Counted from the stretch's first letter, positions 25,625-38,939 are shown. The stretch: DNA of 64,000 bases from IMGVR_UViG_3300027963_000035:124001-188000; one strand, 5' to 3'. Notes: generated from the letters alone by a model not told the origin. Program-made: numbers and translations.

Positions 25625-25691
25625 TGTCTGATTCCTTAGTGGTGTTGGTTACAACTATAACCCGTACTAGATACTATCCCCGTAGGGATCA

Positions 25692-25907
25692 TCAACCCGT
25701 GATGACACTCAGCACTTCATCGTTGAGCGGGTTGATTACCGGATCGAACTCGACCGGAACTTCAACTTCACGCTGATTCTGGATGATGTTGACAATCGCA
25801 TTGACCAGAACCCGCTCGTTGACAGTGTAGTGACCCCGATTGTGAATCTCCTTTGAGGCTTCCATGTCCTTGAGCAACTTCAGGCGACGAGTCTTAGTAA
25901 CTTTCAT
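25692..25907 (-). CDS. hypothetical protein
   Basis: AGGAG RBS, motif at about 25943. Confidence 0.65.
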   Translation of the reverse strand: MKVTKTRRLKLLKDMEASKEIHNRGHYTVNERVLVNAIVNIIQNQREVEVPVEFDPVINPLNDEVLSVITG

Positions 25908-25955
25908 CTCTAACTCCTGAGAAGTGGAGGGAACAACACTAACCCGTACCGGATT

Positions 25956-26234
25956 CTAGTCATGCCTCTTGATTCGATAGTTCATGCCGCCCTCGACCAG
26001 CAGATTCCATCCGTAGGAATCCAATGAATCAATCAACTCCTCAAATACAAGACGATCCGGCAGGAGTGATAACATGATCTTCGGTCCATTGACCTTGCCG
26101 ATGAGCCAGTGTACCGCCCGTTCACGGTCGAATGCCGCCACCCTTTCGGGGTCGAACCGATGGATGAAGGTGCATGGGAACGGCTCTTCTCCGAACCGCT
26201 GAACCAGATCATCAATAGTGGTTTCTAACGCCAT
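25956..26234 (-). CDS. hypothetical protein
   Basis: AAGGA RBS, motif at 26266. Confidence 0.65.
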   Translation of the reverse strand: MALETTIDDLVQRFGEEPFPCTFIHRFDPERVAAFDRERAVHWLIGKVNGPKIMLSLLPDRLVFEELIDSLDSYGWNLLVEGGMNYRIKRHD

Positions 26235-26278
26235 GATTTCCTTTCGTTTCGGGTAACAACTCCCGACCGTACCGGATT

Positions 26279-26479
26279 CTAGTTGATTTCTAGAATATCT
26301 ACCCTCAAACCATCCTTATGGTAACTCTCACCCCTAGAATATCGGGGGAGGGTTGAATGAGTTACTGACGGGTCAAACTTAATAATCCAATCGTCCGCAC
26401 AACCCACTGCATCATAGTAGTTGTCGAAACTGGTAACACTCTCAGGAACACTGTCACGAATGACCATTGCAAGCCACAT
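26279..26479 (-). CDS. hypothetical protein
   Basis: AGGAG RBS, motif at 26502. Confidence 0.65.
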   Translation of the reverse strand: MWLAMVIRDSVPESVTSFDNYYDAVGCADDWIIKFDPSVTHSTLPRYSRGESYHKDGLRVDILEIN

Positions 26480-26515
26480 TTGGATTCTCCTTTGAAGTTT
26501 TACCGTACCAAATCT

Positions 26516-26722
26516 TTATGATTTGAACTGTCGGTCTTTGCTCATAATCCTGTTAACGGCAGCCCAACTCCACTGAAAACTCTTTGGGCCGTTCAACTGA
26601 GCCACAGTAGGAAACTTCTCAAGGAAGCCCACGATTTTAGCGGGCTCCCCATCAAGCCAGCAAGCATTGTCGTTCTTCCACTGTTCAACAGCAAACTCAT
26701 GATCCTCGATTGTGCTTCTCAT
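26516..26722 (-). CDS. hypothetical protein
   Basis: AGGA RBS, motif at 26769. Confidence 0.65.
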   Translation of the reverse strand: MRSTIEDHEFAVEQWKNDNACWLDGEPAKIVGFLEKFPTVAQLNGPKSFQWSWAAVNRIMSKDRQFKS

Positions 26723-26780
26723 TTTTAATCCTAGTTATTAAAAGTAAAAGTAAGGCTCACAAGTCTTTACCGTACCAAAA

Positions 26781-26827
26781 TCGACCGCTAGGATTGAACC
26801 TAGTGAATCCCCAAACGGGACGGTCGA
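26781..26827 (-). ncRNA. truncated tRNA-like element (acceptor stem, one hairpin, T arm)
   Basis: TCGACCG TCCC GTTTG GGGA TTCA CTAGG TTCAAT CCTAG CGGTCGA. Confidence 0.45.
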
Positions 26828-26990
26828 AGATTGTTTAGCGTGGGTTGTTATTATCAATGATAATAGAAATAATACCGCTACACAATCCAAGGAAGCACAT
26901 CATTTGAAGACTCTTCAGGTATTCACAACCAGTCAGATTCCCGGCTTCGACCAGGAACCAGAAACCGTACCCATGGGAAACCCCGTGGGC

Positions 26991-27026
26991 CTCACCCCCC
27001 GGCCTATTGTTTGGCCGGGGGGTGAG
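26991..27026 (-). terminator. 14-bp GC hairpin after HTH paralog
   Basis: ctcaccccccggcc / ggccggggggtgag. Confidence 0.65.
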
Positions 27027-27037
27027 TGTGACTAACT

Positions 27038-27298
27038 TCAGAGCATCTCGACGCCAAGGCTGGCGAGAATCTCCGTCGCACGCTCCTTGGTATTGCTGGT
27101 GCGACCACCACCCTCAAACTTCGGGATATTCAGCCCGTGCTTCTTCCGCAACTGGCTCAGACGCACCGACACCGAACCCGGAACGATGCCCAACTTGCTT
27201 GCAACGTCCTCGACGCTGCCACCAGCCCGCTGCACTTCGATAACCGTGGTGAGAAACGTCTCAAGATCAACACCCTTCTGACCAACTTGGCGACCCAT
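27038..27298 (-). CDS. small sigma-region-4-like HTH protein (paralog 2)
   Basis: MGRQVGQKG..GGSVEDVASKLGIVPGSVSVRLSQLRKK; AGGAG RBS; motif at 27377. Confidence 0.8.
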   Translation of the reverse strand: MGRQVGQKGVDLETFLTTVIEVQRAGGSVEDVASKLGIVPGSVSVRLSQLRKKHGLNIPKFEGGGRTSNTKERATEILASLGVEML

Positions 27299-27396
27299 AG
27301 TAATCATCTCCTGCTTATAGTTACCAACCCTTTGGTTCCCGCTTGCCTCATTGGCTTGCTGTCGGAACAAACCCTAACCGTACCGAATCTTATCCT

Positions 27397-27660
27397 TTAC
27401 CGATTATGACAACGGAAACCGTCTCTCCGTGTCATATTTGCTTCAATCTCCCTAAAAAGATCCCTCATAGCCAGATAGTTCTTAAACTCTGGCTCCTTTT
27501 CAAACTGTGTAGCGGCTTCGATAAGGCTTGAAACCGGCTTCACAGTCTCCCTTGCGTAATAATCTTCAAGGAAACCAAGAGTGTATCGGTCAAGACCACT
27601 ACTGGTTTTTGTATCGTCTGGCATTTTTTCTCTCCAGAAACCGTAAAAACTGTTTTCCAT
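27397..27660 (-). CDS. hypothetical protein (predicted leaderless)
   Basis: ATG 8 nt after TACGGA. Confidence 0.65.
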   Translation of the reverse strand: MENSFYGFWREKMPDDTKTSSGLDRYTLGFLEDYYARETVKPVSSLIEAATQFEKEPEFKNYLAMRDLFREIEANMTRRDGFRCHNR

Positions 27661-27871
27661 ATCTCTGCTCCGTACTAAAAACTAATCTTCGGGGTGAGGG
27701 CCGGGAACACCGTTGAAAAACGGGTTTGGCATCCAAACATCATAATCAGTTAAAATCCATTGACGTTCTGGATGTTCGGCCCCAACATGAAGTGCGTATT
27801 CCCGCATTGCATCAATAGGTTTTGCAAGTTCATCTGGCATCAATCGTCTCCTTTTTTATTGGAACGATAGT

Positions 27872-28078
27872 CTACCGTACCGAAAAGTCACTCTCACACC
27901 AGCCCATAGCCTCCGCCATGTCCTTCTTTATTCCCGGGATCGTCCAAACATTGGCTTCCTGCCTTGATGCTTGCCAACCCTTGAAGGGAACATATCGGAG
28001 TTGATACACAATATCTCCCTCTTTTGCTTCGTAATACGGCTTTGTATTATACCGATTCTTTTTCTTTTGCCAAAGCAT
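27872..28078 (-). CDS. hypothetical protein
   Basis: GAGGAG RBS; ends SVR-stop inside the motif. Confidence 0.6.
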   Translation of the reverse strand: MLWQKKKNRYNTKPYYEAKEGDIVYQLRYVPFKGWQASRQEANVWTIPGIKKDMAEAMGWCESDFSVR

Positions 28079-28123
28079 TGTTATTCTCCTCTGGTTGATA
28101 ACTGTACCTGATCTTACCTGATC

Positions 28124-28444
28124 TTACCTCTTGTAGAGATAACTACCATAGGGATCACAAACTTCGACCAACCTTTGAATATCGTTCACAACATTAAATC
28201 TTGCTCCATTTTTGGCCGGAGCCTTCCAACTTGCTGCCTTATAAATATCCCCATTTTCGTCTATAAAGGCATGGACACTTTTGTTAGCACCCCACAGCGG
28301 TTCCCCGTTACTATCCAGCCAACGCTCTTGACGAACCACTCTAGTATACTTTCGCCCCGGTTCAAGAATGTATTTAGTCTCAGCCCCAGTGGTGTTAGAC
28401 TTCTCAGTCAAAGCAGCGAGCCAAAGTTCGACTTGTTCTTGCAT
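28124..28444 (-). CDS. conserved phage protein
   Basis: GRKY..V...SVHAFID..GD.YKAASWKAPAK pattern common in large phages. Confidence 0.75.
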   Translation of the reverse strand: MQEQVELWLAALTEKSNTTGAETKYILEPGRKYTRVVRQERWLDSNGEPLWGANKSVHAFIDENGDIYKAASWKAPAKNGARFNVVNDIQRLVEVCDPYGSYLYKR

Positions 28445-28476
28445 TGTTATTTCTCCTCTGTTGCCTATTCACCGTA

Positions 28477-28785
28477 CTAAATCAGATTCCGGCCCTTCAG
28501 CCATTCATAGACAACACCGCTGGCGTTGTTGATCTTCATATTATCATTCTGGCAGTCGTTAATAAGGTTGATTAACAATACCCTATTGATATTAACGCCC
28601 TTAACGGGAAGATGCCACCAATCCCCAATATCACAAAACTCCAGTCTAAGGTATTCTAATACCTTGTCCCGATAGTTTTTCCTTGAGGCAAGATCGTGTT
28701 TATTGTATCCCTTGTGGGCGTCGTGACCCTTCACGTTCTTAGTCCCCCACCAATCTTCATAGAATCCATCGTAGAAGTCGTTCAT
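28477..28785 (-). CDS. hypothetical protein
   Basis: AGGAG RBS; TAG stop overlaps the motif at 28471. Confidence 0.65.
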   Translation of the reverse strand: MNDFYDGFYEDWWGTKNVKGHDAHKGYNKHDLASRKNYRDKVLEYLRLEFCDIGDWWHLPVKGVNINRVLLINLINDCQNDNMKINNASGVVYEWLKGRNLI

Positions 28786-28812
28786 TGTGTTTCTCCTTGA
28801 TGATTGATCGTA

Positions 28813-29025
28813 CTAGAAAAGTTCTCTATAGCCGGGGAACTCGTCAATATATCCCACCTGCCATTCAGTACCATCCTCAGCAATCATGGTTTTAATCTTA
28901 GAGGTTGGCTTGTAAAGTGCATTGACCAAAGTATCAATCGCCCAAAAGAAACTCGCTACGATCACAACCATACCAACAAGACTAGTCAGATACATACCGA
29001 TGATGAAAATGTCTGTTGTTGTCAT
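28813..29025 (-). CDS. small membrane protein
   Basis: N-terminal TM helix; motif at 29062. Confidence 0.6.
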   Translation of the reverse strand: MTTTDIFIIGMYLTSLVGMVVIVASFFWAIDTLVNALYKPTSKIKTMIAEDGTEWQVGYIDEFPGYRELF

Positions 29026-29059
29026 CTTTATTACTCTTTAGTGATGTTAGGACAAATCT

Positions 29060-29242
29060 TTACCGTACCAAAATCTGACGGAGTTCATCAGAGAGAGTTT
29101 TTTCTCGCTCCAGAGTTTCAACAATACTACCCAGCCTCATGCTAATGAAGTTGAGAGTATCAGGCTCAACCATACCCTGACTATTCAGGGGAGCAGTATC
29201 CACAAAAATCCTGAGCATCTTGAGAGTATCAATGGTATCCAT
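29060..29242 (-). CDS. hypothetical protein
   Basis: AAGGA RBS; ends LVR-stop in the motif. Confidence 0.55.
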   Translation of the reverse strand: MDTIDTLKMLRIFVDTAPLNSQGMVEPDTLNFISMRLGSIVETLEREKTLSDELRQILVR

Positions 29243-29575
29243 TAGTTCAATCCTTTAGCGACAGAAATAAAGAGGAATATAGATAAAAAGATAACTAGTC
29301 CAGAAAATCAAGAAAGCCAAAATGCCTAGACCACTAACCATACCAAACGTGTCAACATCATCTGGATGTTCACCAAACAGATTGTAGCAAATCCAGTTTT
29401 TCATTGTGAAAACTTTCCTGCGAGAAATCCAAGACAAAATACAATATTCAGAATCGGTAGAATGAACACAAAAAAGATAAAACAAGCACGATACATTTTC
29501 TTTTCCTTAGAAGTATCCATACTGGTCTAACGTCCAGTGGCGTTTTTGACTTCCACCGCTTATAGGATACCTGTA

Positions 29576-29749
29576 CTAGAAACTTTCAAATGCGTCCCAG
29601 AATCCCACCTTATTGCCGTTAGAGTCTTTGAGAACCCCATCATCCCCTGCTTTAATGTTAGAGGGGATTTGAGTTAGAATCTCACCCAGTTCGTTGGGGT
29701 TATCATTAAAACTAGCGTTGTCCATGTTCACTTCAATAATGATTTTCAT
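29576..29749 (-). CDS. hypothetical protein (predicted leaderless)
   Basis: MKIIIEVNMDNASF..DSNGNKVG, 57 aa, ATG 8 nt after TACGGT at 29758; below ORF-track cutoff. Confidence 0.6.
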   Translation of the reverse strand: MKIIIEVNMDNASFNDNPNELGEILTQIPSNIKAGDDGVLKDSNGNKVGFWDAFESF

Positions 29750-29763
29750 ATTTATTCACCGTA

Positions 29764-29988
29764 CTAAAAAGGATAATCTTCGGGCCACTCTTGACTCTGA
29801 CTATATATTTCCATTTCATCATAGTGGGCATTGAGTTCTGGATCATTAGTAAGTTCAACATAATGACCCCGTTCACAAACGATGTTACGCTTCTCCAGAA
29901 TCTTATAGATGATTCTTTCGGCGTTAGTAAGATCGGCAACGCTAATGCCGATGATAGCCCGTGCGATTTGTTCCAGTTCAGTGTTCAT
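29764..29988 (-). CDS. hypothetical protein
   Basis: AGGAG RBS, motif at 30013. Confidence 0.65.
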   Translation of the reverse strand: MNTELEQIARAIIGISVADLTNAERIIYKILEKRNIVCERGHYVELTNDPELNAHYDEMEIYSQSQEWPEDYPF

Positions 29989-30228
29989 CTTTTGCTCCTT
30001 GGGTAAGGTGGAACCGTACTAGATGTTATTGAACTCTGTGCTAAGATACTTCATATCTTCACCGCACTTTTCGCATACCGGGGTTCCGGCATCTTCATAC
30101 CACCACGGAGTAACATGAGTAACACAATCACAATCTGCACAACGCCAAACGTGACGGAGTTTAGTATCGTCGATAACAGTCCAGTTTTCCATTTTATTCT
30201 CCTTGAGTAAGTTGGAACCGTACCAGAA

Positions 30229-30531
30229 TCAACGAATCGTGTTGTTGGGCGTCTGACAAATCATAATCTGCTGCTGAGATTGTGAGGACTGATTTACCAC
30301 AGCAATCTCCATAGAGCCTTGCTGATTGACCCTGCACCAATATGTTCCGGTAGAATCACTCCAATACCGGTAGTTATTATCATAGCCCCTATAGACATTG
30401 TATTGGGGTTCAACACGATGATACTTCCTTGCCTCCACAATCGTATGAACAACAGGGGCGGCTTCCTTACCACACTGGAGACAAGCAACAAGTAATCCAA
30501 CAACTAAACTGGCAATCTGAAGGTAAAACAT
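30229..30531 (-). CDS. hypothetical protein with signal/TM segment
   Basis: Hydrophobic N-terminus, motif at 30574. Confidence 0.65.
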   Translation of the reverse strand: MFYLQIASLVVGLLVACLQCGKEAAPVVHTIVEARKYHRVEPQYNVYRGYDNNYRYWSDSTGTYWCRVNQQGSMEIAVVNQSSQSQQQIMICQTPNNTIR

Positions 30532-30595
30532 TTTCTAATCCTTTGAAGAATGTTTGTTTCGGAACAACCCACAACCGTACCAAAATCAACTATCT

Positions 30596-30898
30596 TTAAC
30601 AAGCCAAATCTTCATTTTTATCTGCGAGGTAGTTTTTGTTTTCTTCACAATCTTCTACCAAGCGAGAATACAAAAATCTTTGTTCAGGGGTATTTTTGTT
30701 TTTGTATACTAAGCCCTGCCCCCGATTCCAGTTGGGTGCAAGGAATATGGCAGAGGCTAAGAGGTCTAACTCCTCATGCAAGAAGTCAATCGTAAAACCA
30801 TTGTTCCTCAGATCATTCGCAGCATTTTCAATGTTTTGATAAACCTTGAAGTTAGTGTATGGATGAACTGGGTCAAAAACAACAAATACAGTTTTCAT
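30596..30898 (-). CDS. hypothetical protein
   Basis: AAGGA RBS, motif at 30927. Confidence 0.65.
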   Translation of the reverse strand: MKTVFVVFDPVHPYTNFKVYQNIENAANDLRNNGFTIDFLHEELDLLASAIFLAPNWNRGQGLVYKNKNTPEQRFLYSRLVEDCEENKNYLADKNEDLAC

Positions 30899-30938
30899 GT
30901 TATCTTCCTTTATTGTCTTTCACACAACCGTACCAAAA

Positions 30939-31142
30939 TCAACTATCCTTTAGACATTCCCTGATCATTTGGATTAGATTAGAAGCGTCACCCAAAGCCG
31001 CAGATTCAAAATCATTTTCAAGATTTTCAGCGACATTATCAAGGATTGTCTCGATATTTCGTAGTGCAATAGCAGTATCCTTTGACGATACAGGCCAGTC
31101 AATACCAAGAGCCTCTGCTATTTGTTTCTTGGTTATTCTCAT
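30939..31142 (-). CDS. hypothetical protein
   Basis: AAGGA RBS. Confidence 0.6.
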   Translation of the reverse strand: MRITKKQIAEALGIDWPVSSKDTAIALRNIETILDNVAENLENDFESAALGDASNLIQMIRECLKDS

Positions 31143-31187
31143 TATTTTCCTTTTGTATTGATATACCGGCTGAGAATGGATCGACTT

Positions 31188-31266
31188 ATGGAACGATGGG
31201 ATTTGAACCCATAACTCCTCTTGCTTTTAAAGCAAGTGGAACTCTATCCAGTTGAGTTACGCTCCA
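31188..31266 (-). tRNA. atypical tRNA-like RNA with elongated anticodon arm (loop UU UAA AA)
   Basis: TGGAGCG/CGTTCCA acceptor, ACTC/GAGT D stem, ATGGG TTCAAAT CCCAT T arm; anticodon arm 23 nt instead of 17. Confidence 0.7.
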
Positions 31267-31516
31267 CGATAGTTTCACAAATAGTGTCCGGTATCACGCA
31301 CTATTCAACCTTATTTAGGTTTCTATCCGACCCCTGACGCATTTATATTGAATCTGTGCCGGGAATCCAACCCGGATAGAGAGCAGCATAAGCCTCACCA
31401 TAGCCTAGTTCGGCAACCCCATACACCCATTAGATGCAGACGCTGTTTGCTGGGCTATCTCTCTACTGTCGGCAGACACACAGTTTGTATCTCGTTGACT
31501 CCACACCGTACCAAAA

Positions 31517-31795
31517 TCAATCGTTCTCGTATATGCCCTTAGTATATTCTTTTGGAATGATTGGACACCAACCTTTAGCCTTTTCATTATCATAAGGCAT
31601 CCAGAATGGAGCATCACAAGCGTCTACTACTCCGAACTTATTATTCACAAAGATATGAGGACAAAGTTTAGTCCCCTTTATTTCACGTTCTTCATAATGG
31701 TATTTGCCAATACCGATCCCAATATTAGGGCCGAAGTAATAAACTTCCTGATCCTTTTCTGGAGGGAAGTTATGACTGCTTTTCCATGTGTTCAT
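31517..31795 (-). CDS. hypothetical protein (predicted leaderless)
   Basis: ATG 8 nt after TACGGT at 31804. Confidence 0.65.
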   Translation of the reverse strand: MNTWKSSHNFPPEKDQEVYYFGPNIGIGIGKYHYEEREIKGTKLCPHIFVNNKFGVVDACDAPFWMPYDNEKAKGWCPIIPKEYTKGIYEND

Positions 31796-31801
31796 GTTTT
31801 T

Positions 31802-32011
31802 CTACCGTACCGAATACAGACTGGCGATTGTTTCACCGTCAAAGTTTTTGTTTAATTCTTTTATATACTTCTCGGCTGATTCTTTATTCTGCCATTTAAC
31901 TACAAATGGCTTTTGGTGAATATCACCTTTATCGGTAACTGGCTTGTGATCCTTATAAACCACAAACCAGCGGCCTTCTTCTTTCACAGAATAGTTATTT
32001 GATCGTTTCAT
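31802..32011 (-). CDS. hypothetical protein
   Basis: Follows tRNA-Glu; ends SVR-stop in the motif. Confidence 0.55.
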   Translation of the reverse strand: MKRSNNYSVKEEGRWFVVYKDHKPVTDKGDIHQKPFVVKWQNKESAEKYIKELNKNFDGETIASLYSVR

Positions 32012-32023
32012 GTTGTTTAAAAG

Positions 32024-32095
32024 TACCCCGTGCCGGTAACGCTCCGGCGTCCCTGAGATGAAAGCCCAGTATACTAACTTCTATACGAACGGGGC
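32024..32095 (-). tRNA. trnE: tRNA-Glu(UUC)
   Basis: GCCCCGT/ACGGGGT acceptor, CTGGG CT TTC AT CTCAG anticodon arm, T loop AGCGTTA; motif 10 nt upstream. Confidence 0.85.
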
Positions 32096-32136
32096 ATGGT
32101 TGTTTACCGTACCAAAAACAATATAGTCTATAACAA

Positions 32137-32174
32137 ATAAAAAATAAACCCCCTCCGTTTTACGGGAGGGGGTT
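32137..32174 (-). terminator. intrinsic terminator after HTH paralog
   Basis: aaccccctccg / cgggagggggtt hairpin with T-rich tail on the minus strand. Confidence 0.7.
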
Positions 32175-32206
32175 CGTATGGCCGATTATTATATCAGCCT
32201 TTAACT

Positions 32207-32461
32207 TCAACCAACCCCAAGGCTGGCGAGAATCTCAGCCGCCCGCTCTGCGGTGTTGCTGGTGCGGCCCGACCCCTCGAACCGGGGGACGTTCACACCG
32301 TGCTTCTTCCGCAGTTGCGAGAGACGCACCGACACCGAACCGGCCGTGATGCCCAGAGCATCGGCAACGTCCTGCACCGAACCGCCGGCCCGCTGCGTCT
32401 CGACCACCGTGGTCAGGAACTTCTCCAGAGCGACACCCTTCTGTCCAACTTGACGACCCAT
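32207..32461 (-). CDS. small sigma-region-4-like HTH protein (paralog 3)
   Basis: GGSVQDVADALGITAGSVSVRLSQLRKK; very GC-rich codons; motif at 32535. Confidence 0.8.
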   Translation of the reverse strand: MGRQVGQKGVALEKFLTTVVETQRAGGSVQDVADALGITAGSVSVRLSQLRKKHGVNVPRFEGSGRTSNTAERAAEILASLGVG

Positions 32462-32571
32462 AGTAGTAATCTCCTGCGTTATTCAACCCTTTGTTGCCGT
32501 TTGCCGAAGTGGCTCACCGTCGCAACGTCCATCAACCGTACCAAAAGACAAGTTTCTCTGTTTATTTCTTT

Positions 32572-32895
32572 TTATTTCTGGAATGAGTTCAGAGTTATAT
32601 TCGTTAACTCAGTTGAAACTTCTTCAAGTTCCTTCTGTATTTCCTTCTTCCTTCTCGCTAGTCTCTTAACCTTTTCGGCTTCTTTAATCTTCACACTATT
32701 GTCAAACTGTTTAATGCAATCAAGCATTAAAGTTTCAACATCATTGCCTGTACTAAAAGTTACTTCGCCATAATCGCCATCTCTAACCGTAACCCTAAAT
32801 CCACGGACATGATTACCGATTATAAAGTTTCTTCCGAAACCTTTTGATAAGAAAAGTTTTACTTTAGGGTGTAGCATACTCATATTATTCTGCAA
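32572..32895 (-). CDS. hypothetical protein
   Basis: 107 aa, C-terminal coiled coil. Confidence 0.6.
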   Translation of the reverse strand: MQNNMSMLHPKVKLFLSKGFGRNFIIGNHVRGFRVTVRDGDYGEVTFSTGNDVETLMLDCIKQFDNSVKIKEAEKVKRLARRKKEIQKELEEVSTELTNITLNSFQK

Positions 32896-33247
32896 ACCTT
32901 AGTGGACTATTGTTATTATTTTCGTCTACAGGGTTCGCAGAAGAAACAATTTCATTCACAGAAGGTTTGAAACTAACCGTCACAGAACTAGCATCACGGC
33001 GGGTCATGCCAGTCGCTAGGCAGAAACTAAGTTTAGCATCACTTTCTTCCTTCCTAAATTCCTCTAGGATTTGATCCTGAGTTACAGGTTCACCCATAAG
33101 GTTACTAACCGTACCTCCAAAGATTTCCATAACTTCACAGATTCCGCCGTACCACATAGTGGCATCACCGGGATCGCAGTTATAAATATTGAGCCTGTCC
33201 TCAATGTTGTTGAGTTTAACAGTGCAATAATAACGATAATGTTCCAT
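32885..33247 (-). CDS. hypothetical protein
   Basis: AAGGA RBS, motif at 33274. Confidence 0.65.
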   Translation of the reverse strand: MEHYRYYCTVKLNNIEDRLNIYNCDPGDATMWYGGICEVMEIFGGTVSNLMGEPVTQDQILEEFRKEESDAKLSFCLATGMTRRDASSVTVSFKPSVNEIVSSANPVDENNNNSPLRFAE

Positions 33248-33441
33248 TTTTTCTATCCTTTCGTTACTACTCTACCGTACCAAAAACTATCGGGCCGTTT
33301 CTTCCTTAACTGTTTCCATGACAATTAAATTTTCATCATAAGGAAGATTATCCAAAAAATTATGTAATTTTTCTGGATTTTCATATGGGTCGTATTTGAT
33401 TTGCCCTTGTTCATAGTAAATGTGAACGTAAAACATTACTA

Positions 33442-33654
33442 TTATTTAGCAGACCTGTATTCAACCTGAATAGTAGAATTTCTACTAACCATCTTCACAA
33501 AATTTGAAACACTTTCCCAATCAGGACTAGAGTCAATATACAACTCTTTTTCAGACCCGGGGAAGGCACTCAGTAAATATATTTCAAAACCACCGGAAGG
33601 ATACTCACCATCAACATATGGTTTATTTGTATTGATTACAATGTATTGTTTCAT
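33442..33654 (-). CDS. hypothetical protein
   Basis: ATGA overlap with the upstream gene. Confidence 0.6.
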   Translation of the reverse strand: MKQYIVINTNKPYVDGEYPSGGFEIYLLSAFPGSEKELYIDSSPDWESVSNFVKMVSRNSTIQVEYRSAK

Positions 33655-34004
33655 TCAAAACTTTTCAACAGTACCACATTTGGAAAGTAGTTCCAAACAT
33701 TACTGGGGTATTCTGAACTATTGTTTAATATGGGCTCGCCACTAATATACCAGTTGAAATCTTTCTGGTAAATATTTCTACCTTCACAAAATTTACGAAG
33801 GATACAATTAAGCCGGCTCTTGGTAACATATGTAGTGTATCCCTGATTATTAATCCCTACAGTCTTGTTGGTAATTTTAGCAATCAGGTTATTAAACAAA
33901 AAGACAAGAATCACATCATCGGCAACTTCAACCCTAGTGTTGCCACAAGAATGATTCTTCTTGTTCAAGATGCTATCAATCATCTCTTGTTCAATCTTAC
34001 GCAT
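33651..34004 (-). CDS. conserved phage protein
   Basis: MRKIEQEM...GNT.V...G..T..TKSRLN pattern; motif at 34038. Confidence 0.7.
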   Translation of the reverse strand: MRKIEQEMIDSILNKKNHSCGNTRVEVADDVILVFLFNNLIAKITNKTVGINNQGYTTYVTKSRLNCILRKFCEGRNIYQKDFNWYISGEPILNNSSEYPSNVWNYFPNVVLLKSFE

Positions 34005-34127
34005 CTTCTTCCTCAAGAGGGAGGTCGGGAAACTCCAACCGTACCAGAAACTATGTGGTTGAGAGAATGATTTAATGCGTTGATTGGTATATATAATACA
34101 TATAACCAAAAATCAAAAGGAGTATAT

Positions 34128-34595
34128 ATGAATAGCTGTAAATATTGCAATAGAACTATAAACAATAAAGGCTCTCTTGCATCTCATGAATTATGTTGTC
34201 AAAATAATCCCAAAAGAGTCAAAAGAATAAAATCACCAAAAGCAGGTGTTCAAAAAGGTTGCATACCTTGGAACAAAGGCAAAAAATTTGATGAAATAAC
34301 CTCCGCCAGTTTAAAAGAAAAAATAGAAAGTGGACAATATAAAACGTTTTGTGAATATCATGCTCGTAAATTAATAAAAAAATACTTAATACAAACACAT
34401 GGACATAAGTGTATAATGTGCGGATTATCGGAATGGCTAGGAGTCAGAATTCCCTTAGTTTGTGATCATATAGATGGTAATGCTGAAAATCATGATTTAT
34501 CTAACATGAGAATTATATGTAATAATTGCGATTCAATAACTGCAACTTTTAAAGGAAGAAACAGAGGCAAAGGAAGGAAAAATAGATATAAATAA
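34128..34595 (+). CDS. HNH endonuclease
   Basis: CIMCG..W....PL..DHIDGN..N....N.R.ICNNCD. Confidence 0.85.
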   Translation: MNSCKYCNRTINNKGSLASHELCCQNNPKRVKRIKSPKAGVQKGCIPWNKGKKFDEITSASLKEKIESGQYKTFCEYHARKLIKKYLIQTHGHKCIMCGLSEWLGVRIPLVCDHIDGNAENHDLSNMRIICNNCDSITATFKGRNRGKGRKNRYK

Positions 34596-34664
34596 AGTTT
34601 AGAATAGTATATACCTATAGATTAACAATGACGTTAATCATGTTTTTTTAAAAGGAGTTTTATT

Positions 34665-35120
34665 ATGAGTGCAACAACATCACAAGGCACAGGTTTAGGA
34701 ATGGCCCCTAACCAAGTTTGTTTAACAGCCGCTGGCCCTCACATTGTCGCTGCTGGCATTGCCAGAACAGGAACTGTAGGATCAGACGGACAAACTAACA
34801 ATTGGTGGATCACAGTTGATTTAGAAGAAGTATTACCTTTAAATCCAGATATGTATAGTGTTATACTAACACAATGCGACGAAGAAGGTGCTTTACAAGG
34901 CGAGAATGGTCAAAGACCAAACCACGGCCCTCACGTTGAAAAATACGTTAAGGTCAATGGAACTCGTTATAACAAGTATGGTATTGACGATGAGTTCGAT
35001 AACTATGATAACTGGAAGAACAATGGTTTAGCTGGTTTCGTTATTCACTCAGGTGACGGCGATCCACACACCATGCAATACGTTGTAGTAAGAAATGGTT
35101 TCTTAAGACTAAGTAACTAA
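34665..35120 (+). CDS. hypothetical protein, possibly structural
   Basis: AAGGAG RBS, followed by a terminator. Confidence 0.7.
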   Translation: MSATTSQGTGLGMAPNQVCLTAAGPHIVAAGIARTGTVGSDGQTNNWWITVDLEEVLPLNPDMYSVILTQCDEEGALQGENGQRPNHGPHVEKYVKVNGTRYNKYGIDDEFDNYDNWKNNGLAGFVIHSGDGDPHTMQYVVVRNGFLRLSN

Positions 35121-35148
35121 TAATTTAACTAAAAACACATTCGGTGTT

Positions 35149-35178
35149 AACCCCAAGACTAACCTCTTGGGGTTTTTT
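35149..35178 (+). terminator. intrinsic terminator between convergent genes
   Basis: aaccccaag / cttggggtt followed by a T run. Confidence 0.75.
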
Positions 35179-35407
35179 ATTGTACCAAACCCTTTTGTAT
35201 CTGCCAATTCTTATGCTCCATAACAACGTCGATATTATTACGAAGTAGATTATCAGGAGCAGTATCACAATACAAACTAATCATCTCGAGAATATCGTCT
35301 AAACTATTCTTGAGAATATTATCTTGAGTTAAACTCTTTGAATAAGAAAGTTTACTGGCGATCTTGCAAAAGAGTATGGCCTGTTCCTTATCCATAAGAT
35401 TCACCAT
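35177..35407 (-). CDS. hypothetical protein
   Basis: 76 aa, coupled to HTH paralog 4. Confidence 0.55.
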   Translation of the reverse strand: MVNLMDKEQAILFCKIASKLSYSKSLTQDNILKNSLDDILEMISLYCDTAPDNLLRNNIDVVMEHKNWQIQKGLVQ

Positions 35408-35631
35408 TGTGGCACAGGGGCTCCCTTAGCCCGGAGTTTATGACAACGCTGCCTTACTGCTTGAGGAGAGATCCCCAATTCATTTGCAACACTAATACTG
35501 TTTCCGCCATTCTTAACGGCTTCTACAATACTCTTGAGGAAAACGTCAAGGGGGATTCTCTTATTCTTCTTCTGAGTGGCTTCAGTTTCACCACCAAGAA
35601 TGAAATCACTAAAGTCAATATCGTCTAGCAT
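35401..35631 (-). CDS. small sigma-region-4-like HTH protein (paralog 4)
   Basis: IPLDVFL..GGNSISVANELGISPQAVRQRCHKLR; motif at 35659. Confidence 0.75.
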   Translation of the reverse strand: MLDDIDFSDFILGGETEATQKKNKRIPLDVFLKSIVEAVKNGGNSISVANELGISPQAVRQRCHKLRAKGAPVPQW

Positions 35632-35847
35632 CTAGAGTTCTCCGTGTGACACCCTCACACCGTACCAGATTCTACCGTTCTCTCTACCCAGATTTCACAA
35701 CCAAACTTCATTCTGGCGAATCTATTTGCGTCCCATTCGCTATAAGCAGATACATACCCTGCTATTCGGTTGTTCTTCCAAACAATCCAAGTATATTTTT
35801 CCATAATACCTCTATTATAATCTAATAGAGGATATTGGTCAATACAT

Positions 35848-36201
35848 TTAAACACCACTCTTAAGAGCCCGATTAGTAGCAATCTTCACACCCAGTTTAC
35901 GATTAAACATTCCGCCTGCTGGAACATTAAACTTACCCCTCAGATCACGACCATCAGGAGTAGTAATCTCCACAATAGTAAAGCCGCCCTTGCAACTGAG
36001 TTCCCAGTTCACACTTTGAACTAAGTTGTTAAATTGTTCATATTCACGCTTGCTCATATATTCGTGAATAATTTCTGGAGAGTTAGCATGATCCGGAGTA
36101 ACACAACGGAGATAAACCCGTCCGTGATAAACACGAACCTTATAACCAGTCTTACGAAGAACTTCTACGTTTGGCATTTCAATTTTAGTCAAGGTAGTCA
36201 T
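35848..36201 (-). CDS. hypothetical protein
   Basis: 117 aa, AAGGA RBS. Confidence 0.65.
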   Translation of the reverse strand: MTTLTKIEMPNVEVLRKTGYKVRVYHGRVYLRCVTPDHANSPEIIHEYMSKREYEQFNNLVQSVNWELSCKGGFTIVEITTPDGRDLRGKFNVPAGGMFNRKLGVKIATNRALKSGV

Positions 36202-36216
36202 AATTAAATTTCCTTT

Positions 36217-36441
36217 TTACCAGGGGCGGGCAGGGTCACGACGAAGAATTTTTTTCTTCTTCTTATAAAAAGCCTTAGTCTCTGATTCAACTTGTTCTTT
36301 GAACTCTTTGATTCTAGATCGTAAATCTGCGACTTTTTCACTAAATGTAAGTGTCGAAGTTTCAAAGTCCTTGCTAATCTTGTTAAGTGGAGGCATACCA
36401 CTAACAAATTTGTGCCACCAATTAGAATGTTGATCACTCAT
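36217..36441 (-). CDS. hypothetical protein
   Basis: TAATG overlap with the upstream gene. Confidence 0.55.
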   Translation of the reverse strand: MSDQHSNWWHKFVSGMPPLNKISKDFETSTLTFSEKVADLRSRIKEFKEQVESETKAFYKKKKKILRRDPARPW

Positions 36442-36761
36442 TAAAGATCCCTCTTTCTTTTAACATCCTCAACAGTATGATTATACTCTATTCCACTTTC
36501 TCGGCAATATCTGCTGATGGGATAGTATCCACTAAAACGTCCATAACCATTATCAACAAGCCACTTACCGGCATTGTATGACCATTGATCCCCATACCCA
36601 TAAGTGAAAGGAATCTTATGAACCAAATGGTCATTTACCCAAATTTCAACGGTATGGTAGGTATTACCATAAGAGCGTTGAAACCATCGACGAGCATGAA
36701 GATAAATTTTCTTAACTTCAACAAAACTGGTGAGGAGTTTTTCTTTTTGGATTGTTTCCAT
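36441..36761 (-). CDS. conserved phage protein (predicted leaderless)
   Basis: RWF....GNTYH.V....YGYG; ATG 8 nt after TACGGT at 36770. Confidence 0.7.
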   Translation of the reverse strand: METIQKEKLLTSFVEVKKIYLHARRWFQRSYGNTYHTVEIWVNDHLVHKIPFTYGYGDQWSYNAGKWLVDNGYGRFSGYYPISRYCRESGIEYNHTVEDVKRKRDL

Positions 36762-36809
36762 GCTCACTCACCGTACCAGAGGGAAAGAAAATTTTTACTA
36801 TTTTAGGAT

Positions 36810-37421
36810 ATGGATCCTGCTTCAAAATACCCAAATCAATATGATTTATGTTCCTGTGGTAAACACAAAACAATCTTGTCTAAACATTGTATCAAATGCT
36901 GCAATAATGGTCAAATAAAATATCTAACAATCAAAGATGCGATGGTATCAGCACTGCATGGACAAAGTGCAAAATTTAATGTTGTCAGAAACAGAGCCAG
37001 GGTTCAATATAGGAATATAAAGTGTCAATTTTGCGGATACGATAAACACGTTGAAGTTTGTCACATTAAACCAATCCACTCATTCCCAGAAGAAACTTTA
37101 ATATCTGAGGTGAATGACCAGTCTAATATTTTAATTCTTTGTCCCAATTGTCATTGGGAGTTTGACAAAAAGAATCAAAAACCTAGAAAAGAAAAAATAA
37201 AAAAACAAAGACCAAGGAAGGTTGAATGGCCCACAAAAGAATTACTAAAAAAACTTGTATGGGAAATGCCAACCATTCAAATTGCTAAACAATATGGAGT
37301 ATCTGATAAAGCTGTTGGTAAATGGGTAAAGAAATATAATCTAACCAAACCACCAAGAGGATATTGGAGAAAAAACAAAGAGTGCGACCCCTGGGAATCG
37401 AACCCAGAACCCCAAAATTAA
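36810..37421 (+). CDS. HNH endonuclease with C-terminal HTH
   Basis: CQFCGY...VEVCHIKPI...N...LCPNCHWEFD; IAKQYGVSDKAVGKW. Confidence 0.9.
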   Translation: MDPASKYPNQYDLCSCGKHKTILSKHCIKCCNNGQIKYLTIKDAMVSALHGQSAKFNVVRNRARVQYRNIKCQFCGYDKHVEVCHIKPIHSFPEETLISEVNDQSNILILCPNCHWEFDKKNQKPRKEKIKKQRPRKVEWPTKELLKKLVWEMPTIQIAKQYGVSDKAVGKWVKKYNLTKPPRGYWRKNKECDPWESNPEPQN

Positions 37422-37455
37422 AAGTTTCGTGCTCTGCCAATTGAGCTAGGGTCGC
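37383..37455 (-). tRNA. trnK: tRNA-Lys(UUU)
   Basis: GCGACCC/GGGTCGC acceptor, GCTC/GAGC D stem, CT TTT AA loop, CTGGG TTCGATT CCCAG. Confidence 0.92.
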
Positions 37456-37511
37456 CCGACTTAATCAACAACAAAACACTACCGTACCAGAAACAAACTT
37501 TTCGTCAACCC

Positions 37512-37543
37512 CTCCCCTCCCCCACATTAAAGGGGGAGGGGAG
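37512..37543 (-). terminator. GC hairpin after HTH paralog
   Basis: ctcccctccccc / gggggaggggag. Confidence 0.65.
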
Positions 37544-37556
37544 AAGATTAAATCCT

Positions 37557-37811
37557 TCACTCAACCCCAAGCGAGGCAAGGATAGCCGCTGCCCGTTCAG
37601 CGGTGTTGCTAGTCCGACCACCACCCTCAAAGCGGGGGATATTCAGACCATGCTTCTTCCGCAACTGCGAAAGACGCACCGAAACCGAACCGGCCACAAT
37701 GCCCAGTTCGTTCGCAACATCTTCAACACTACCGCCAGCCCGCTGCGTCTCGATGACACAGGTGAGGAAACGCTCCAGCGACACACCAGCCTGACCCTTA
37801 GCACGACCCAT
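37557..37811 (-). CDS. small sigma-region-4-like HTH protein (paralog 5)
   Basis: MGRAKGQAG..GGSVEDVANELGIVAGSVSVRLSQLRKK; motif at 37877. Confidence 0.8.
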   Translation of the reverse strand: MGRAKGQAGVSLERFLTCVIETQRAGGSVEDVANELGIVAGSVSVRLSQLRKKHGLNIPRFEGGGRTSNTAERAAAILASLGVE

Positions 37812-37894
37812 AGTATTAAACTCCCTCTTTAACAACCCTTTCTTCCAGACTCACGTTGAATCGGGAACAACCACCAACCGTACCAAAAGGAAAC

Positions 37895-38380
37895 TTACTT
37901 CTTTCTTAAACTACCTAAAAACCTGTCTTTGACACTATAAAGAACTTTTTCGTAATCTTTAATGAAAACTTCAATTTGATCGTGTTCACCTGGTGCTGAT
38001 ACATCCATACTCACATAATCCTCGCCCTGCATACCCTGTTCACTATAGTCTACTGCGTTGAGTCCCTTTTTACTGAAACCTAAATCAATAAGACTTTTCT
38101 TAAAGGTAGTCAGCCAAAGTTTATCGGTATAAATCAAACCATGCTTTTCAACATTCCAAGTTTTCTTGGAAAAATACGCCCTTAATTCAAAACAATCATC
38201 GTGTCCTTCGTAAGTGTTCAAATCAAGTTCGATTATCTTCACAAAGTCTTTAACTACACCACTCCAATAACCGCTACCTTCAGTAGAGGTGACTAGACTC
38301 ACTTTACGAATATAATGATAACAATCTGGACGCACTTTAAGGCCAGTTTCAATCCAGTCAGGACGAGGATTAATCTTCAT
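37895..38380 (-). CDS. conserved phage protein
   Basis: G.GYWS...EL..YF...W....HGLIYTD...DYSEQGMQG..YVS. Confidence 0.7.
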   Translation of the reverse strand: MKINPRPDWIETGLKVRPDCYHYIRKVSLVTSTEGSGYWSGVVKDFVKIIELDLNTYEGHDDCFELRAYFSKKTWNVEKHGLIYTDKLWLTTFKKSLIDLGFSKKGLNAVDYSEQGMQGEDYVSMDVSAPGEHDQIEVFIKDYEKVLYSVKDRFLGSLRKK

Positions 38381-38585
38381 CGTAATCATTCTCCGGTGGA
38401 AACAAGTTGTCGAAACAGGTTCCACAAGTCTGACTAATCATCAATTCCCGATCATCTGCACTAAGATGGGGAAACAAGTCTTGAATAAAACCTTGTCCCA
38501 TACTCCACTTCACATATGTGGAGGGATCAACACTAATAAGTTTCTTCACACCGCAGAGTCGGCAGGAGATACTAATGTTTTGCAT
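38370..38585 (-). CDS. small zinc-ribbon protein (predicted leaderless)
   Basis: CxxC ... IQD.FP.LS...RE..IS..CxxC; ATG 8 nt after TACGCT. Confidence 0.7.
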   Translation of the reverse strand: MQNISISCRLCGVKKLISVDPSTYVKWSMGQGFIQDLFPHLSADDRELMISQTCGTCFDNLFPPENDYDED

Positions 38586-38612
38586 GGTCAAAAAGCGTAC
38601 CAGAGGGAAACT

Positions 38613-38903
38613 CTAGACTTTAAAAGGAGGAGTTGAACAAGAGGGATTACCAGTGTGTGAAAAACTAGTCTTAAAACACCCCTCATTAAAATGCTTCTGG
38701 TATTCCTCGTTAAACAGGATCTGGTAAGCCAAACCACCAAACTCTGCAATTTCTTTCAGACGCTTGAGGTTCTGTTCACCATTACGCCAGACCCTATTAT
38801 CGTCGCTCCAACTGTAATACCAGTCGTGATTCTCTAGGAGAGTCTTGTATTCAGCGAGTTTCTGGTCGAAACTGGCAAGCATACTGTTTTTACTAGTTTC
38901 CAT
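38613..38903 (-). CDS. hypothetical protein (predicted leaderless)
   Basis: HDWYY..SDD..VW..G pattern; ATG 8 nt after TACGGT at 38912. Confidence 0.7.
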   Translation of the reverse strand: METSKNSMLASFDQKLAEYKTLLENHDWYYSWSDDNRVWRNGEQNLKRLKEIAEFGGLAYQILFNEEYQKHFNEGCFKTSFSHTGNPSCSTPPFKV

Positions 38904-38939
38904 GACAAGAGACCGTACCAAAAAGAAAAGAAGAAACCT

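What the first reader, a model, noticed from the sequence alone, without database searches (positions are those of the whole stretch)
27397..38912. Six leaderless genes and a tRNA fix the start site of the motif
Seen: ATGs at 27660, 29749, 31795, 36761, 38585 and 38903 each lie exactly 8 nt after the hexamer (TACGGA GCAGAGAT ATG; TACGGT GAATAAAT ATG; TACGGT AGAAAAAC ATG; TACGGT GAGTGAGC ATG; TACGCT TTTTGACC ATG; TACGGT CTCTTGTC ATG) with no convincing Shine-Dalgarno. The same offset puts +1 two nt before mature tRNA-Glu. Inference: these are leaderless mRNAs, the strongest internal evidence that the motif is a promoter.
Basis: partly seen in the sequence, partly recalled or inferred. Interest (0 to 1): 0.6.

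Follow-up and report, generated by a model that had tools for sequence, protein, structure and literature searches.

The report
Leaderless genes behind a megaphage promoter
In a huge uncultured phage, several small genes begin exactly where a phage-specific promoter is predicted to start transcription, so their messages probably have no leader; this is a real example of a known trick, not a new mechanism.

Summary
All six ATGs lie exactly 8 nt after a TACGGT-type hexamer on the minus strand. The hexamer is the core of a ~28-bp motif found about 66 times on one strand of this 251-kb phage contig. ATG at that offset occurs 9 times against about 1.2 at any other offset.

- **Start site:** that position is a purine preceded by a pyrimidine in nearly all sites, as expected of a transcription start.
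- **Conserved spacing:** relatives at 70-95% identity keep the 8-nt distance although the spacer letters change.
- **Same N-terminus:** distant homologues of two of the genes start at the same methionine but carry a classical Shine-Dalgarno.

Leaderless mRNA from an extended -10-like promoter (TGG-TAnnnT) is therefore the best reading, at confidence about 0.7.

Three reservations:
- No RNA data could be obtained, so no start site is mapped.
- Gene 27660 has an in-frame, Shine-Dalgarno-led ATG 36 nt downstream.
- The tRNA argument is unsound. The ATG before tRNA-Glu is a relic of a leaderless gene split by a tRNA insertion. In the sister genome two tRNAs begin inside or right after the hexamer.

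The polymerase or sigma factor was not found. I rate it a new member of a known kind.

The parts
38904..38929 (-). Promoter motif (T-rich upstream box, TGG, hexamer TACGGT at 38917..38912, 8-nt spacer) directly abutting the ATG at 38903
   Evidence: PWM score 25.3. The G001 orthologue keeps the offset with 3 spacer changes.
38613..38903 (-). Candidate leaderless gene, 96 aa (METSKNS...)
   Evidence: Homologues at 94% and 73% identity cover 100% of the query. The only upstream in-frame start is a TTG inside the motif itself.
38586..38611 (-). Promoter motif with variant hexamer TACGCT (38599..38594), abutting the ATG at 38585. The stop codon of the preceding gene lies just before its upstream box.
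   Evidence: PWM 20.9. G001 has TACGGT here at the same offset.
38370..38585 (-). Candidate leaderless gene, 71 aa, with CxxC...CxxC cysteine pairs (a zinc-ribbon guess from the sequence)
   Evidence: phrog_20898. A 56%-identical orthologue in L150 starts at the same Met but behind a GGAAGGTG Shine-Dalgarno and without the motif.
36762..36787 (-). Promoter motif (hexamer 36775..36770) abutting the ATG at 36761
   Evidence: PWM 26.0. Four different spacers in orthologues, all 8 nt long.
36441..36761 (-). Candidate leaderless gene, 106 aa (phrog_6246 family)
   Evidence: Nine close homologues all start ME/DTI...; no other in-frame start within 40 codons.
31796..31821 (-). Promoter motif (hexamer 31809..31804) abutting the ATG at 31795
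   Evidence: PWM 23.4. Three spacer versions in G000, G001 and L195, always 8 nt.
31517..31795 (-). Candidate leaderless gene, 92 aa, member of a widespread phage protein family
   Evidence: 96 homologues. In the 21 aligned, Met1 is invariant. Distant homologues in L193 and L194 carry AAAGGAG or GAGGGA before the same Met.
29750..29775 (-). Promoter motif (hexamer 29763..29758, with TAG in place of TGG) abutting the ATG at 29749; from the coordinates, that TAG looks like the stop codon of the upstream gene
   Evidence: PWM 16.4. The upstream ORF ends at 29764.
29576..29749 (-). Candidate leaderless gene, 57 aa
   Evidence: A PHROG match reaches residue 6-7. The G001 orthologue has GTG instead of ATG at the same position.
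27661..27686 (-). Promoter motif with variant hexamer TACGGA (27674..27669) abutting the ATG at 27660
   Evidence: PWM 17.4. The G001 orthologue has a different upstream half and TACGGT at the same offset.
27397..27660 (-). 87-aa ORF; the weakest leaderless candidate, because an in-frame ATG at 27624 is preceded by GGAGAG
   Evidence: An in-frame 6-nt indel between Met1 and Met13 relative to G001 is compatible with coding from Met1. The Shine-Dalgarno before Met13 is kept in both genomes.
32098..32123 (-). Promoter motif (hexamer 32111..32106) ahead of tRNA-Glu, preceded by a strong terminator hairpin (32175..32146)
32023..32095 (-). tRNA-Glu(UUC), beginning 2 nt after the proposed +1. It is flanked by a direct repeat AAACAAC(C)ATG.
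31802..32011 (-). 69-aa gene (MKRSNN...) 12 nt after the tRNA, without a Shine-Dalgarno. Its orthologue in L195/L196 sits leaderless directly at the same promoter.
37382..37455 (-). tRNA-Lys(UUU), 17 nt downstream of the proposed +1 of the promoter at 37486
22361..38929 (-). Promoter-dense arm: 42 motif sites in 16.6 kb, all co-oriented with many small genes. Most genes have 11-35-nt leaders with AGGAG-type Shine-Dalgarno sequences.

Best explanation
**Setting.** The window lies in a 251-kb fragment of a huge uncultured phage, roughly 0.45-0.5 Mb when complete. One arm of the genome is transcribed from a single class of phage-specific promoter.

**The promoter.** The motif reads G-T-T-T-[C/G]-n-T-T-Y-Y-G-G-TACGGT, then an 8-nt, often G-rich spacer ending in a pyrimidine, then a purine. 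I read TGG-TAnnnT as an extended -10-like element of a multisubunit RNA polymerase holoenzyme. The GTTTCC box would be an extra upstream contact for an unidentified sigma or activator. The purine would be +1. These assignments are inferred.

**The leaderless genes.** More such sites occur in relatives. The transcript would begin pppAUG and be translated without a Shine-Dalgarno, by ribosomes that recognise a 5'-terminal AUG (inferred from established knowledge of leaderless translation). The other roughly 85% of these promoters give short leaders with strong Shine-Dalgarno sequences.

**Switching between modes.** Promoter cassettes recombine between relatives, so the same gene can be leaderless in one phage and Shine-Dalgarno-led in another (shown by comparison).
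For: **The motif behaves as a promoter**
- There are 66 sites on one strand against 4 on the other, all co-oriented with the genes and lying just upstream of them. Some examples are preceded by terminator hairpins.
- The sister genome G001 has 76 against 5.

**Evidence for the start site**
- Offset 14 is a purine in 62 of 69 sites and offset 13 a pyrimidine in 57 of 69.
- The purine is kept in all of the ~20 sites I read off in relatives at 70-85% identity.
- ATGs are almost absent at offsets 15-24 and resume at 25.
- Shine-Dalgarno cores linked to starts begin at offset 13-14 and not before.

**ATG at +1**
- It occurs 9 times against 1.2 expected. Every A-T at +1/+2 is followed by G. Seven of the nine open 57-170 codons.

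**Conservation of spacing but not of sequence**
- The 36761 family has four different spacers. The 31795 family has three. Genome position 194234 has two, with 5 of 8 letters changed and an indel just after the ATG. The gene at G001 45314 has three. All spacers are exactly 8 nt.

**True N-termini**
- Alignment A1 and alignment A2 (Met1 invariant across the query and 21 homologues).
- Upstream in-frame stops.

**Mode switching**
- Homologues in L193, L194 and L150 start at the same Met behind AAAGGAG, GAGGGA or GGAAGGTG.
- G000 gene 34018 is Shine-Dalgarno-led, while its G001 orthologue sits 1 nt after the proposed +1.

**Hexamer variants fit TAnnnT**
- TACAGT and TATAGT occur at orthologous promoters in relatives.
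- The same layout, a TANNNT -10 motif 6-7 bp before the ORF, is experimentally shown to give leaderless mRNAs in Deinococcus-Thermus (PMC12340547).
Against: - No transcription start is mapped. No RNA run was listed for this sequence.
- In G001, tRNA-Glu (Rfam 59 bits) begins at hexamer position 3 and tRNA-Ser (50 bits) at position 6. Each follows a terminator-like hairpin. If they are made from the adjacent motif, +1 must lie at or before position 3.
- No sigma factor, single-subunit RNA polymerase, beta subunit, MotA or AsiA was found in the ~326 kb available from G000 plus G001. The enzyme is therefore unknown.
- An 8-nt discriminator is at the long end for sigma-70-type promoters.
- Gene 27660 has a conserved internal Shine-Dalgarno-led start.
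- The G001 orthologue of 29749 has GTG, which is a poor leaderless start codon (my own knowledge).
- Three of eight spacers, read together with the end of the hexamer, give GGAG or GGTG at Shine-Dalgarno distance.
Confidence: 0.7

Rival explanations
1. The motif is a promoter, but transcription starts at or near the first G of TACGGT. This is a T7-like layout: about 15 conserved bp followed by a GG start. The ATG genes would then carry an 11-nt leader without a Shine-Dalgarno and would not be truly leaderless.
For: In G001 tRNA-Glu nt 1 is hexamer position 3 and tRNA-Ser nt 1 is position 6, each after a terminator-like hairpin. All five promoter-proximal tRNAs start at position 3 or later. The conserved block is contiguous and about 18 bp long, like single-subunit polymerase promoters.
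Against: No PF00940 polymerase was found in G000, G001 or the complete 595-kb relative. This model does not explain the conserved pyrimidine-purine at offsets 13/14 or the strict ATG offset. Orthologous hexamers TATAGT and TACAGT look like -10 elements. The tRNA positions can be explained by insertion: G000 tRNA-Glu carries flanking direct repeats and split a leaderless gene, and the G001 tRNA-Ser replaces a 1.1-kb cassette.
Confidence: 0.12
2. The genes are translated mainly from read-through polycistronic transcripts. The 8-nt distance would reflect use of the hexamer's GG(T/A)G as a weak Shine-Dalgarno, or translational coupling, rather than a 5'-terminal AUG.
For: GGAG lies 7 nt before 27660, and GGTG before 29749 and 36761. 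Promoters are only 200-700 bp apart and many lack an intervening terminator.
Against: Five of the eight leaderless-candidate families have no such match: GGTA, GGTC, GGTT and CGCT follow-ons. Shine-Dalgarno spacing tolerates about 5-10 nt, yet the offset is exactly 8 in every orthologue. Genuine Shine-Dalgarno sequences in this phage are strong AGGAG-type.
Confidence: 0.1
3. The motif is an RNA-level signal, a processing or cleavage site on long transcripts. Cleavage before offset 14 would create AUG-terminal mRNAs with 5'-monophosphate ends.
For: Nothing specific supports this. Strand specificity and position before genes would also fit an RNA signal.
Against: The fit to TGnTAnnnT with pyrimidine-purine 8 nt downstream is what a promoter predicts. 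Terminator-then-motif units at some sites argue for new initiation. I saw no obvious inverted repeat in the motif by eye; no folding was run.
Confidence: 0.05
4. The ATGs at this offset are chance.
For: The motif itself prefers A or G at offset 14 and T at 15. That raises the naive expectation to about 4 sites.
Against: All 9 A-T sites continue with G. Seven open long ORFs. Orthologues keep the arrangement despite spacer turnover.
Confidence: 0.01

Closest known systems
-10 motif (TANNNT, most often TACACT) placed 6-7 bp before ORFs in Deinococcus-Thermus, giving leaderless mRNAs (PMC12340547). From my own memory, leaderless middle/late transcripts of Thermus phage phiYS40 (Sevostyanova et al. 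2007; I could not open the paper).
   Same: A TAnnnT-type hexamer without a -35 element at a fixed short distance from the start codon. Shine-Dalgarno-led and leaderless genes are mixed in one genome. The start codon serves as +1.
   Different: Here the hexamer is embedded in a much longer, nearly invariant 28-bp motif, used by a phage and not known to belong to the host. The spacing is 8 bp, not 6-7. Only about 12% of the sites are leaderless. The phage DNA is about 35% G+C, far below the high-G+C Deinococcus-Thermus hosts (G+C of those hosts from memory). Nothing here is experimentally mapped.
Classical leaderless phage and bacterial mRNAs: lambda cI from PRM, and actinobacterial leaderless genes (named from my own knowledge; reference-list entries for Shean & Gottesman 1992, Brock et al. 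2008 and Shell et al. 2015 were seen)
   Same: A 5'-terminal AUG with no Shine-Dalgarno.
   Different: Those use host sigma-70/SigA promoters. Here a dedicated phage motif is used, and there are several unrelated genes rather than one regulator.
PeSL promoter-terminator cassettes that mediate modular shuffling in T4-like phages (PMC2839356, PMC4122927)
   Same: Small ORFs each have their own conserved promoter, at some sites preceded by a stem-loop. Differences between close relatives are bounded by the motif, for example the different upstream halves at 27674 and G001 178500, and the cassette swaps at 34-35 kb and 36.8-37.4 kb.
   Different: The promoter sequence is unrelated to T4 early promoters. 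Recombination at the motif is inferred from two genomes only.
Jumbo phages with mapped start sites (phiKZ, AR9)
   Same: Large phages with their own promoter classes.
   Different: phiKZ showed no leaderless transcript. AR9 5' UTRs are 26-491 nt (PMC8244752, PMC5312081). Both encode multisubunit polymerases that were not found here.

Membership tests
Leaderless mRNA genes | The primary transcript 5' end coincides with the A of the start codon | not testable with these tools
   No RNA run was listed. The start is inferred only from pyrimidine-purine conservation at offsets 13/14.
Leaderless mRNA genes | The start codon is the real N-terminus and cannot be extended upstream | tested here: met
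   In-frame stops, or only motif-internal GTG/TTG, lie upstream. Homologue N-termini coincide. Shine-Dalgarno-led homologues use the same Met.
Leaderless mRNA genes | No Shine-Dalgarno is available on the transcript; AUG rather than GUG/UUG | tested here: met
   All six are ATG and nothing lies upstream of +1 in the model. GTG/TTG at +1 never opens a long ORF in G000. Caveats: 27660 has an internal Shine-Dalgarno-led ATG, and the G001 orthologue of 29749 is GTG.
Leaderless mRNA genes | The promoter-to-start-codon distance is fixed and under selection | tested here: met
   The spacer is exactly 8 nt in all orthologues although its sequence turns over.
Sigma-70-family extended -10 promoter (TGnTAnnnT) | TAnnnT hexamer with TG one base upstream | tested here: met
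   T0, A1 and T5 are near-invariant. G at -2 in 55 of 69 sites and T at -3 in 34 of 69. Variants TATAGT and TACAGT occur in relatives.
Sigma-70-family extended -10 promoter (TGnTAnnnT) | A purine start 6-9 nt after the hexamer | tested here: inconclusive
   A purine sits 9 nt after T5 in 62 of 69 sites, but the start is unmapped. The G001 tRNAs conflict with it.
Sigma-70-family extended -10 promoter (TGnTAnnnT) | A cognate sigma factor is present | tested here: not met
   No Sigma70_r2 in G000 or G001 and only weak generic HTH hits. About a third of the genome is missing. The 595-kb relative has three sigma-like ORFs with no homologue here.
T7-like single-subunit RNA polymerase promoter | A PF00940 polymerase gene in the phage | tested here: not met
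   covering G000, G001 and LR756511.1. The control genomes did not ring, and the genome is incomplete, so this is weak negative evidence.
T4 middle promoter (MotA box plus TAnnnT, sigma appropriation) | MotA and AsiA homologues; box centred at -30 | tested here: not met
   No MotCF and no significant AsiA hit. The upstream box is centred near -24.
PeSL-type mobile promoter cassettes | Insertions, deletions and replacements between close relatives are bounded by the promoter motif, with stem-loops next to it | tested here: met
   G000/G001 block boundaries fall at motif sites. Terminator-like hairpins lie just upstream at 32175, 29092 and 23469. Only a few junctions were inspected.

The most novel reading that the evidence does not exclude
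The megaphage lineage may carry its own, still unidentified promoter-recognition factor. Its 28-bp promoter would serve as both the transcription and the translation start signal. Because the promoter is also a recombination cassette, genes would flip between Shine-Dalgarno-led and leaderless expression. tRNA genes would insert into leaderless 5' ends, so that tRNA processing, as in mitochondrial 'punctuation', would release near-leaderless mRNAs such as the gene at 32011.
Probability: 0.2. Interest if true: 0.65.

Novelty: new member of a known kind. Interest (0 to 1): 0.45.

Why it matters
**Annotation.** Gene callers that rely on Shine-Dalgarno sequences can mis-start such genes, and the motif gives an anchor for exact start codons.

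**Transcription map.** The motif offers a ready-made, testable map for an uncultured roughly half-megabase phage: about 66 promoters with single-base start predictions. It also gives a defined DNA target for finding the unknown sigma or polymerase.

**Gene expression.** Leaderless and Shine-Dalgarno-led genes share one promoter class here, and homologues differ in mode between phages. That makes the system a natural experiment on when leaderless translation is tolerated or favoured during infection.

**Limit.** Leaderless mRNAs themselves are well known, so the general significance is moderate.

Tried and rejected
**Searches that came back empty**
- RNA evidence: the look-up of sequencing runs listed no RNA run.
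- Near-identical DNA in the phage collection: none.
- Polymerase or factor in G000 and G001: PF00940, Sigma70_r2, Rpb2_6, MotCF and AsiA all absent or insignificant.
- Large ORFs scanned with PHROGs and Pfam gave structural proteins, a helicase, a ligase, RCC1 and beta-propeller proteins, but no polymerase.
- tblastn with the three sigma-like ORFs of LR756511.1 found nothing.
- A 272-aa HTH protein at G001 46186-47004 gave only generic HTH hits.

**Leads that did not hold up**
- The 595-kb relative LR756511.1 (portal 51% identical) does not share the motif, with 2+2 copies. Its apparent enrichment of the reversed word TGGCATGG is dispersed over the genome, and I dropped it as probably compositional.
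- Other IMG/VR loci with a single exact motif copy (L028, L030-L032) look like chance matches.
- The 191-kb contig from the same metagenome could not be searched whole.
- Sigma-70 consensus promoters are not enriched in the region: 47 against 37.6 +/- 7.1.
- Sigma-54 and ECF geometries were considered by eye and rejected because the spacing does not fit.
- Codon-position counts between G000 and G001 are too few to show purifying selection: 14 synonymous against 25 non-synonymous codons.
- The phiYS40 paper could not be opened.

- No alternative genetic code was used.

Full report
**Where the window lies**

The window is bases 124001-188000 of a 251,265-bp IMG/VR virus record that CheckV rates about 50% complete. 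The portal is T4-like, and its best match (51% identity) is the 595-kb uncultured phage LR756511.1. A second contig, G001 (323,267 bp), is about 95% identical over nearly the whole record. It lies in reverse orientation and extends 70 kb further. A 191-kb contig from the same metagenome matches that extension at 96% and is probably the rest of this genome.

**The motif**

TACGGT occurs 56 times in the window against 13 expected, 50 of them on the minus strand. Aligning the sites gives a motif of about 28 bp:
- G-T-T-T-[C/G]-n-T-T-Y-Y-G-G, then TACGGT;
- five weakly constrained, often G-rich bases;
- then G-T-Y-R-T.

A weight matrix finds 66 sites on the minus strand and 4 on the plus strand. 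All lie between genome positions 146,361 and 247,559, and 42 of them fall within window 22,361-38,917. G001 has 76 against 5. The sites lie just upstream of co-oriented genes. Several are directly preceded by terminator-like hairpins. In some sites A replaces G at position -2, giving TAG; at 29763 this TAG appears, from the ORF end at 29764, to be the stop codon of the upstream gene.

**The observation**

They open ORFs of 57-106 codons.

Count the T of the hexamer as 0.
- ATG at offset 14 occurs at 9 of 66 sites, against a mean of 1.2 at other offsets.
- Offsets 15-24 are almost empty, and ATGs resume from offset 25, where Shine-Dalgarno-led starts lie.
- All nine A-T dinucleotides at offsets 14-15 are followed by G.
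- Seven of the nine open 57-170 codons, whereas GTG/TTG at the same place never does in this genome.

The other two sites are the tRNA-Glu promoter and an ATG-TGA at 22494. A seventh gene of this type lies at genome position 194,234, outside the window.

**Where transcription probably starts**

- Offset 14 is a purine in 62 of 69 sites and offset 13 a pyrimidine in 57 of 69. The purine persists in all of the ~20 sites I read off in relatives at 70-85% identity.
- Shine-Dalgarno cores tied to starts begin at offsets 13-14 and never earlier. A separate peak of GAGG at offsets 7-8 belongs to the G-rich spacer and is too close to any ATG to act as a Shine-Dalgarno.
- The hexamer conforms to TAnnnT, with G-G and often T before it. 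That is the extended -10 pattern TGnTAnnnT. Orthologous promoters in relatives carry TACAGT and TATAGT.

I therefore read the motif as an extended -10-like promoter with an extra upstream box, and the purine 9 nt after the hexamer's last T as +1. This is inference. No RNA run was listed for the sequence.

**Comparative tests of the leaderless reading**

The 8-nt distance survives although the spacer letters change:

| Gene family | Spacer versions | Sources |
|---|---|---|
| 36761 | 4 | G000, L192, L189/L190, L191 |
| 31795 | 3 | G000, G001, L195/L196 |
| genome 194,234 | 2 (5 of 8 letters differ, plus an indel just after the ATG) | G000, L097 |
| G001 45314 | 3 | G001, L114, L068 |

- Genes 38903, 38585 and 27660 also keep the distance in G001.
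- The methionines are real N-termini. Nine close homologues of 36761 start ME/DTI. Met1 is invariant across the query and 21 homologues of 31795.
- Upstream extension is blocked by stops or would start inside the motif.
- Distant homologues of 31795 (L193, L194) and a 56%-identical orthologue of 38585 (L150) begin at the same methionine. Each has a classical Shine-Dalgarno and no motif.
- Conversely, G000 gene 34018 is Shine-Dalgarno-led, while its G001 orthologue sits one base after the proposed +1.

The eight leaderless candidates are unrelated to one another, so the common offset is convergent.

**Weak points**

- Gene 27660 has the variant hexamer TACGGA, which with the next base spells GGAG 7 nt before the ATG. 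It also has an in-frame ATG at 27624 preceded by GGAGAG, and this is kept in G001. An in-frame 6-nt indel between the two methionines is compatible with coding from the first but does not prove it.
- The G001 orthologue of 29749 has GTG.

**The tRNA argument does not hold**

- G000 tRNA-Glu is flanked by the direct repeat AAACAAC(C)ATG.
- In L195/L196 there is no tRNA at this place. The gene that follows the tRNA in G000 (32011, MKR...) sits leaderless at this very promoter. The ATG in front of the tRNA is therefore a relic.
- In G001, tRNA-Glu starts at hexamer position 3 and tRNA-Ser at position 6, both with good Rfam scores and both behind hairpins.
- If those tRNAs are transcribed from the adjacent motif, +1 would have to lie at or before position 3. 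That is the main rival: a T7-like layout giving 11-nt leaders.
- I rate this rival low. It leaves the pyrimidine-purine pair and the strict ATG offset unexplained. No single-subunit polymerase was found. The tRNAs look like inserted cassettes. It cannot be excluded.

**The enzyme**

No sigma factor, polymerase subunit, MotA or AsiA was detected in the roughly 326 kb available. The 595-kb relative encodes three sigma-70-family ORFs but does not use this motif. About a third of the genome is missing, so absence proves little.

**Comparison with what is known**

- The closest described arrangement is the TANNNT -10 motif 6-7 bp before ORFs in Deinococcus-Thermus, which has been shown to give leaderless mRNAs (PMC12340547).
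- From memory, the middle and late transcripts of Thermus phage phiYS40 are similar, but I could not open that paper.
- phiKZ and AR9, the jumbo phages with mapped start sites, show no leaderless transcripts.
- The cassette-like turnover around the motif resembles the PeSL elements of T4-like phages.

**Verdict**

The finding is a new member of a known kind, well supported by comparison and unverified by RNA data.

- Confidence in the leaderless reading: about 0.7.
- Interest: 0.45.

Noticed in passing
window 20338-20530 (-), next to tRNA-Thr 20567-20637 (-): A group I intron match (Rfam RF00028, 68.6 bits, full length) lies 36 nt downstream of tRNA-Thr. I did not work out which gene it interrupts.
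   Followed up: no
window 32009-32105 (-); L195:690-850: tRNA-Glu is flanked by the direct repeat AAACAAC(C)ATG. A relative without the tRNA has the downstream gene (MKR...) leaderless at the same promoter. This suggests the tRNA inserted into a leaderless 5' end. The gene at 32011 now sits 12 nt after the tRNA without a Shine-Dalgarno.
   Followed up: partly
L043:12321-12414 and L043:14361-14438 (G001 172321-172414 and 174361-174438): In the sister genome tRNA-Ser (odd anticodon ACT) and a canonical tRNA-Glu begin at position 6 and position 3 of the promoter hexamer, each after a terminator-like hairpin. G000's own tRNA-Glu has a non-canonical T-loop and a lower Rfam score (41.6 against 59.1 bits).
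   Followed up: partly
window 36810-37421 (+): An HNH endonuclease ORF (PF13391, 1.2e-9) lies on the opposite strand, between tRNA-Lys and the promoter of gene 36761. In G001 the tRNA is directly followed by that promoter. It looks like a homing-endonuclease insertion.
   Followed up: partly
window 34080-35120 (+): Two plus-strand ORFs (171 and 151 aa, no Pfam hit) sit inside the minus-strand gene array. In G001 the 1.1-kb segment is replaced by about 150 bp carrying the motif plus tRNA-Ser.
   Followed up: partly
window 22361-22494 (-): Four motif copies occur within 135 bp at the downstream end of the promoter cluster. One has ATG followed directly by TGA at +1. They lie ahead of a 434-aa gene (20697-22001) that has no family match.
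   Followed up: no
window 22000-34000: The promoter-dense arm has 41-48% G+C, against about 33% in most of the rest of the window.
   Followed up: no
L102, L114 (contig Ga0209400_1000011, 191,131 bp): A contig from the same metagenome as the window matches the part of G001 that extends beyond this record (96% identity). It overlaps the record's end at 85% identity. It is probably the rest of this phage genome and could hold the missing polymerase or sigma gene.
   Followed up: partly
window 27176 and 37689 (-): Two weak motif hits with TTCGGT sit in near-identical sequence of about 60 nt. These look like paralogous gene segments rather than promoters.
   Followed up: no
window 3723-6947 (-), 12423-15917 (-): Two very large proteins (1074 and 1164 aa) carry DUF5122 beta-propeller repeats with fn3 or F5/8 type C domains. 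They have no PHROG match.
   Followed up: no
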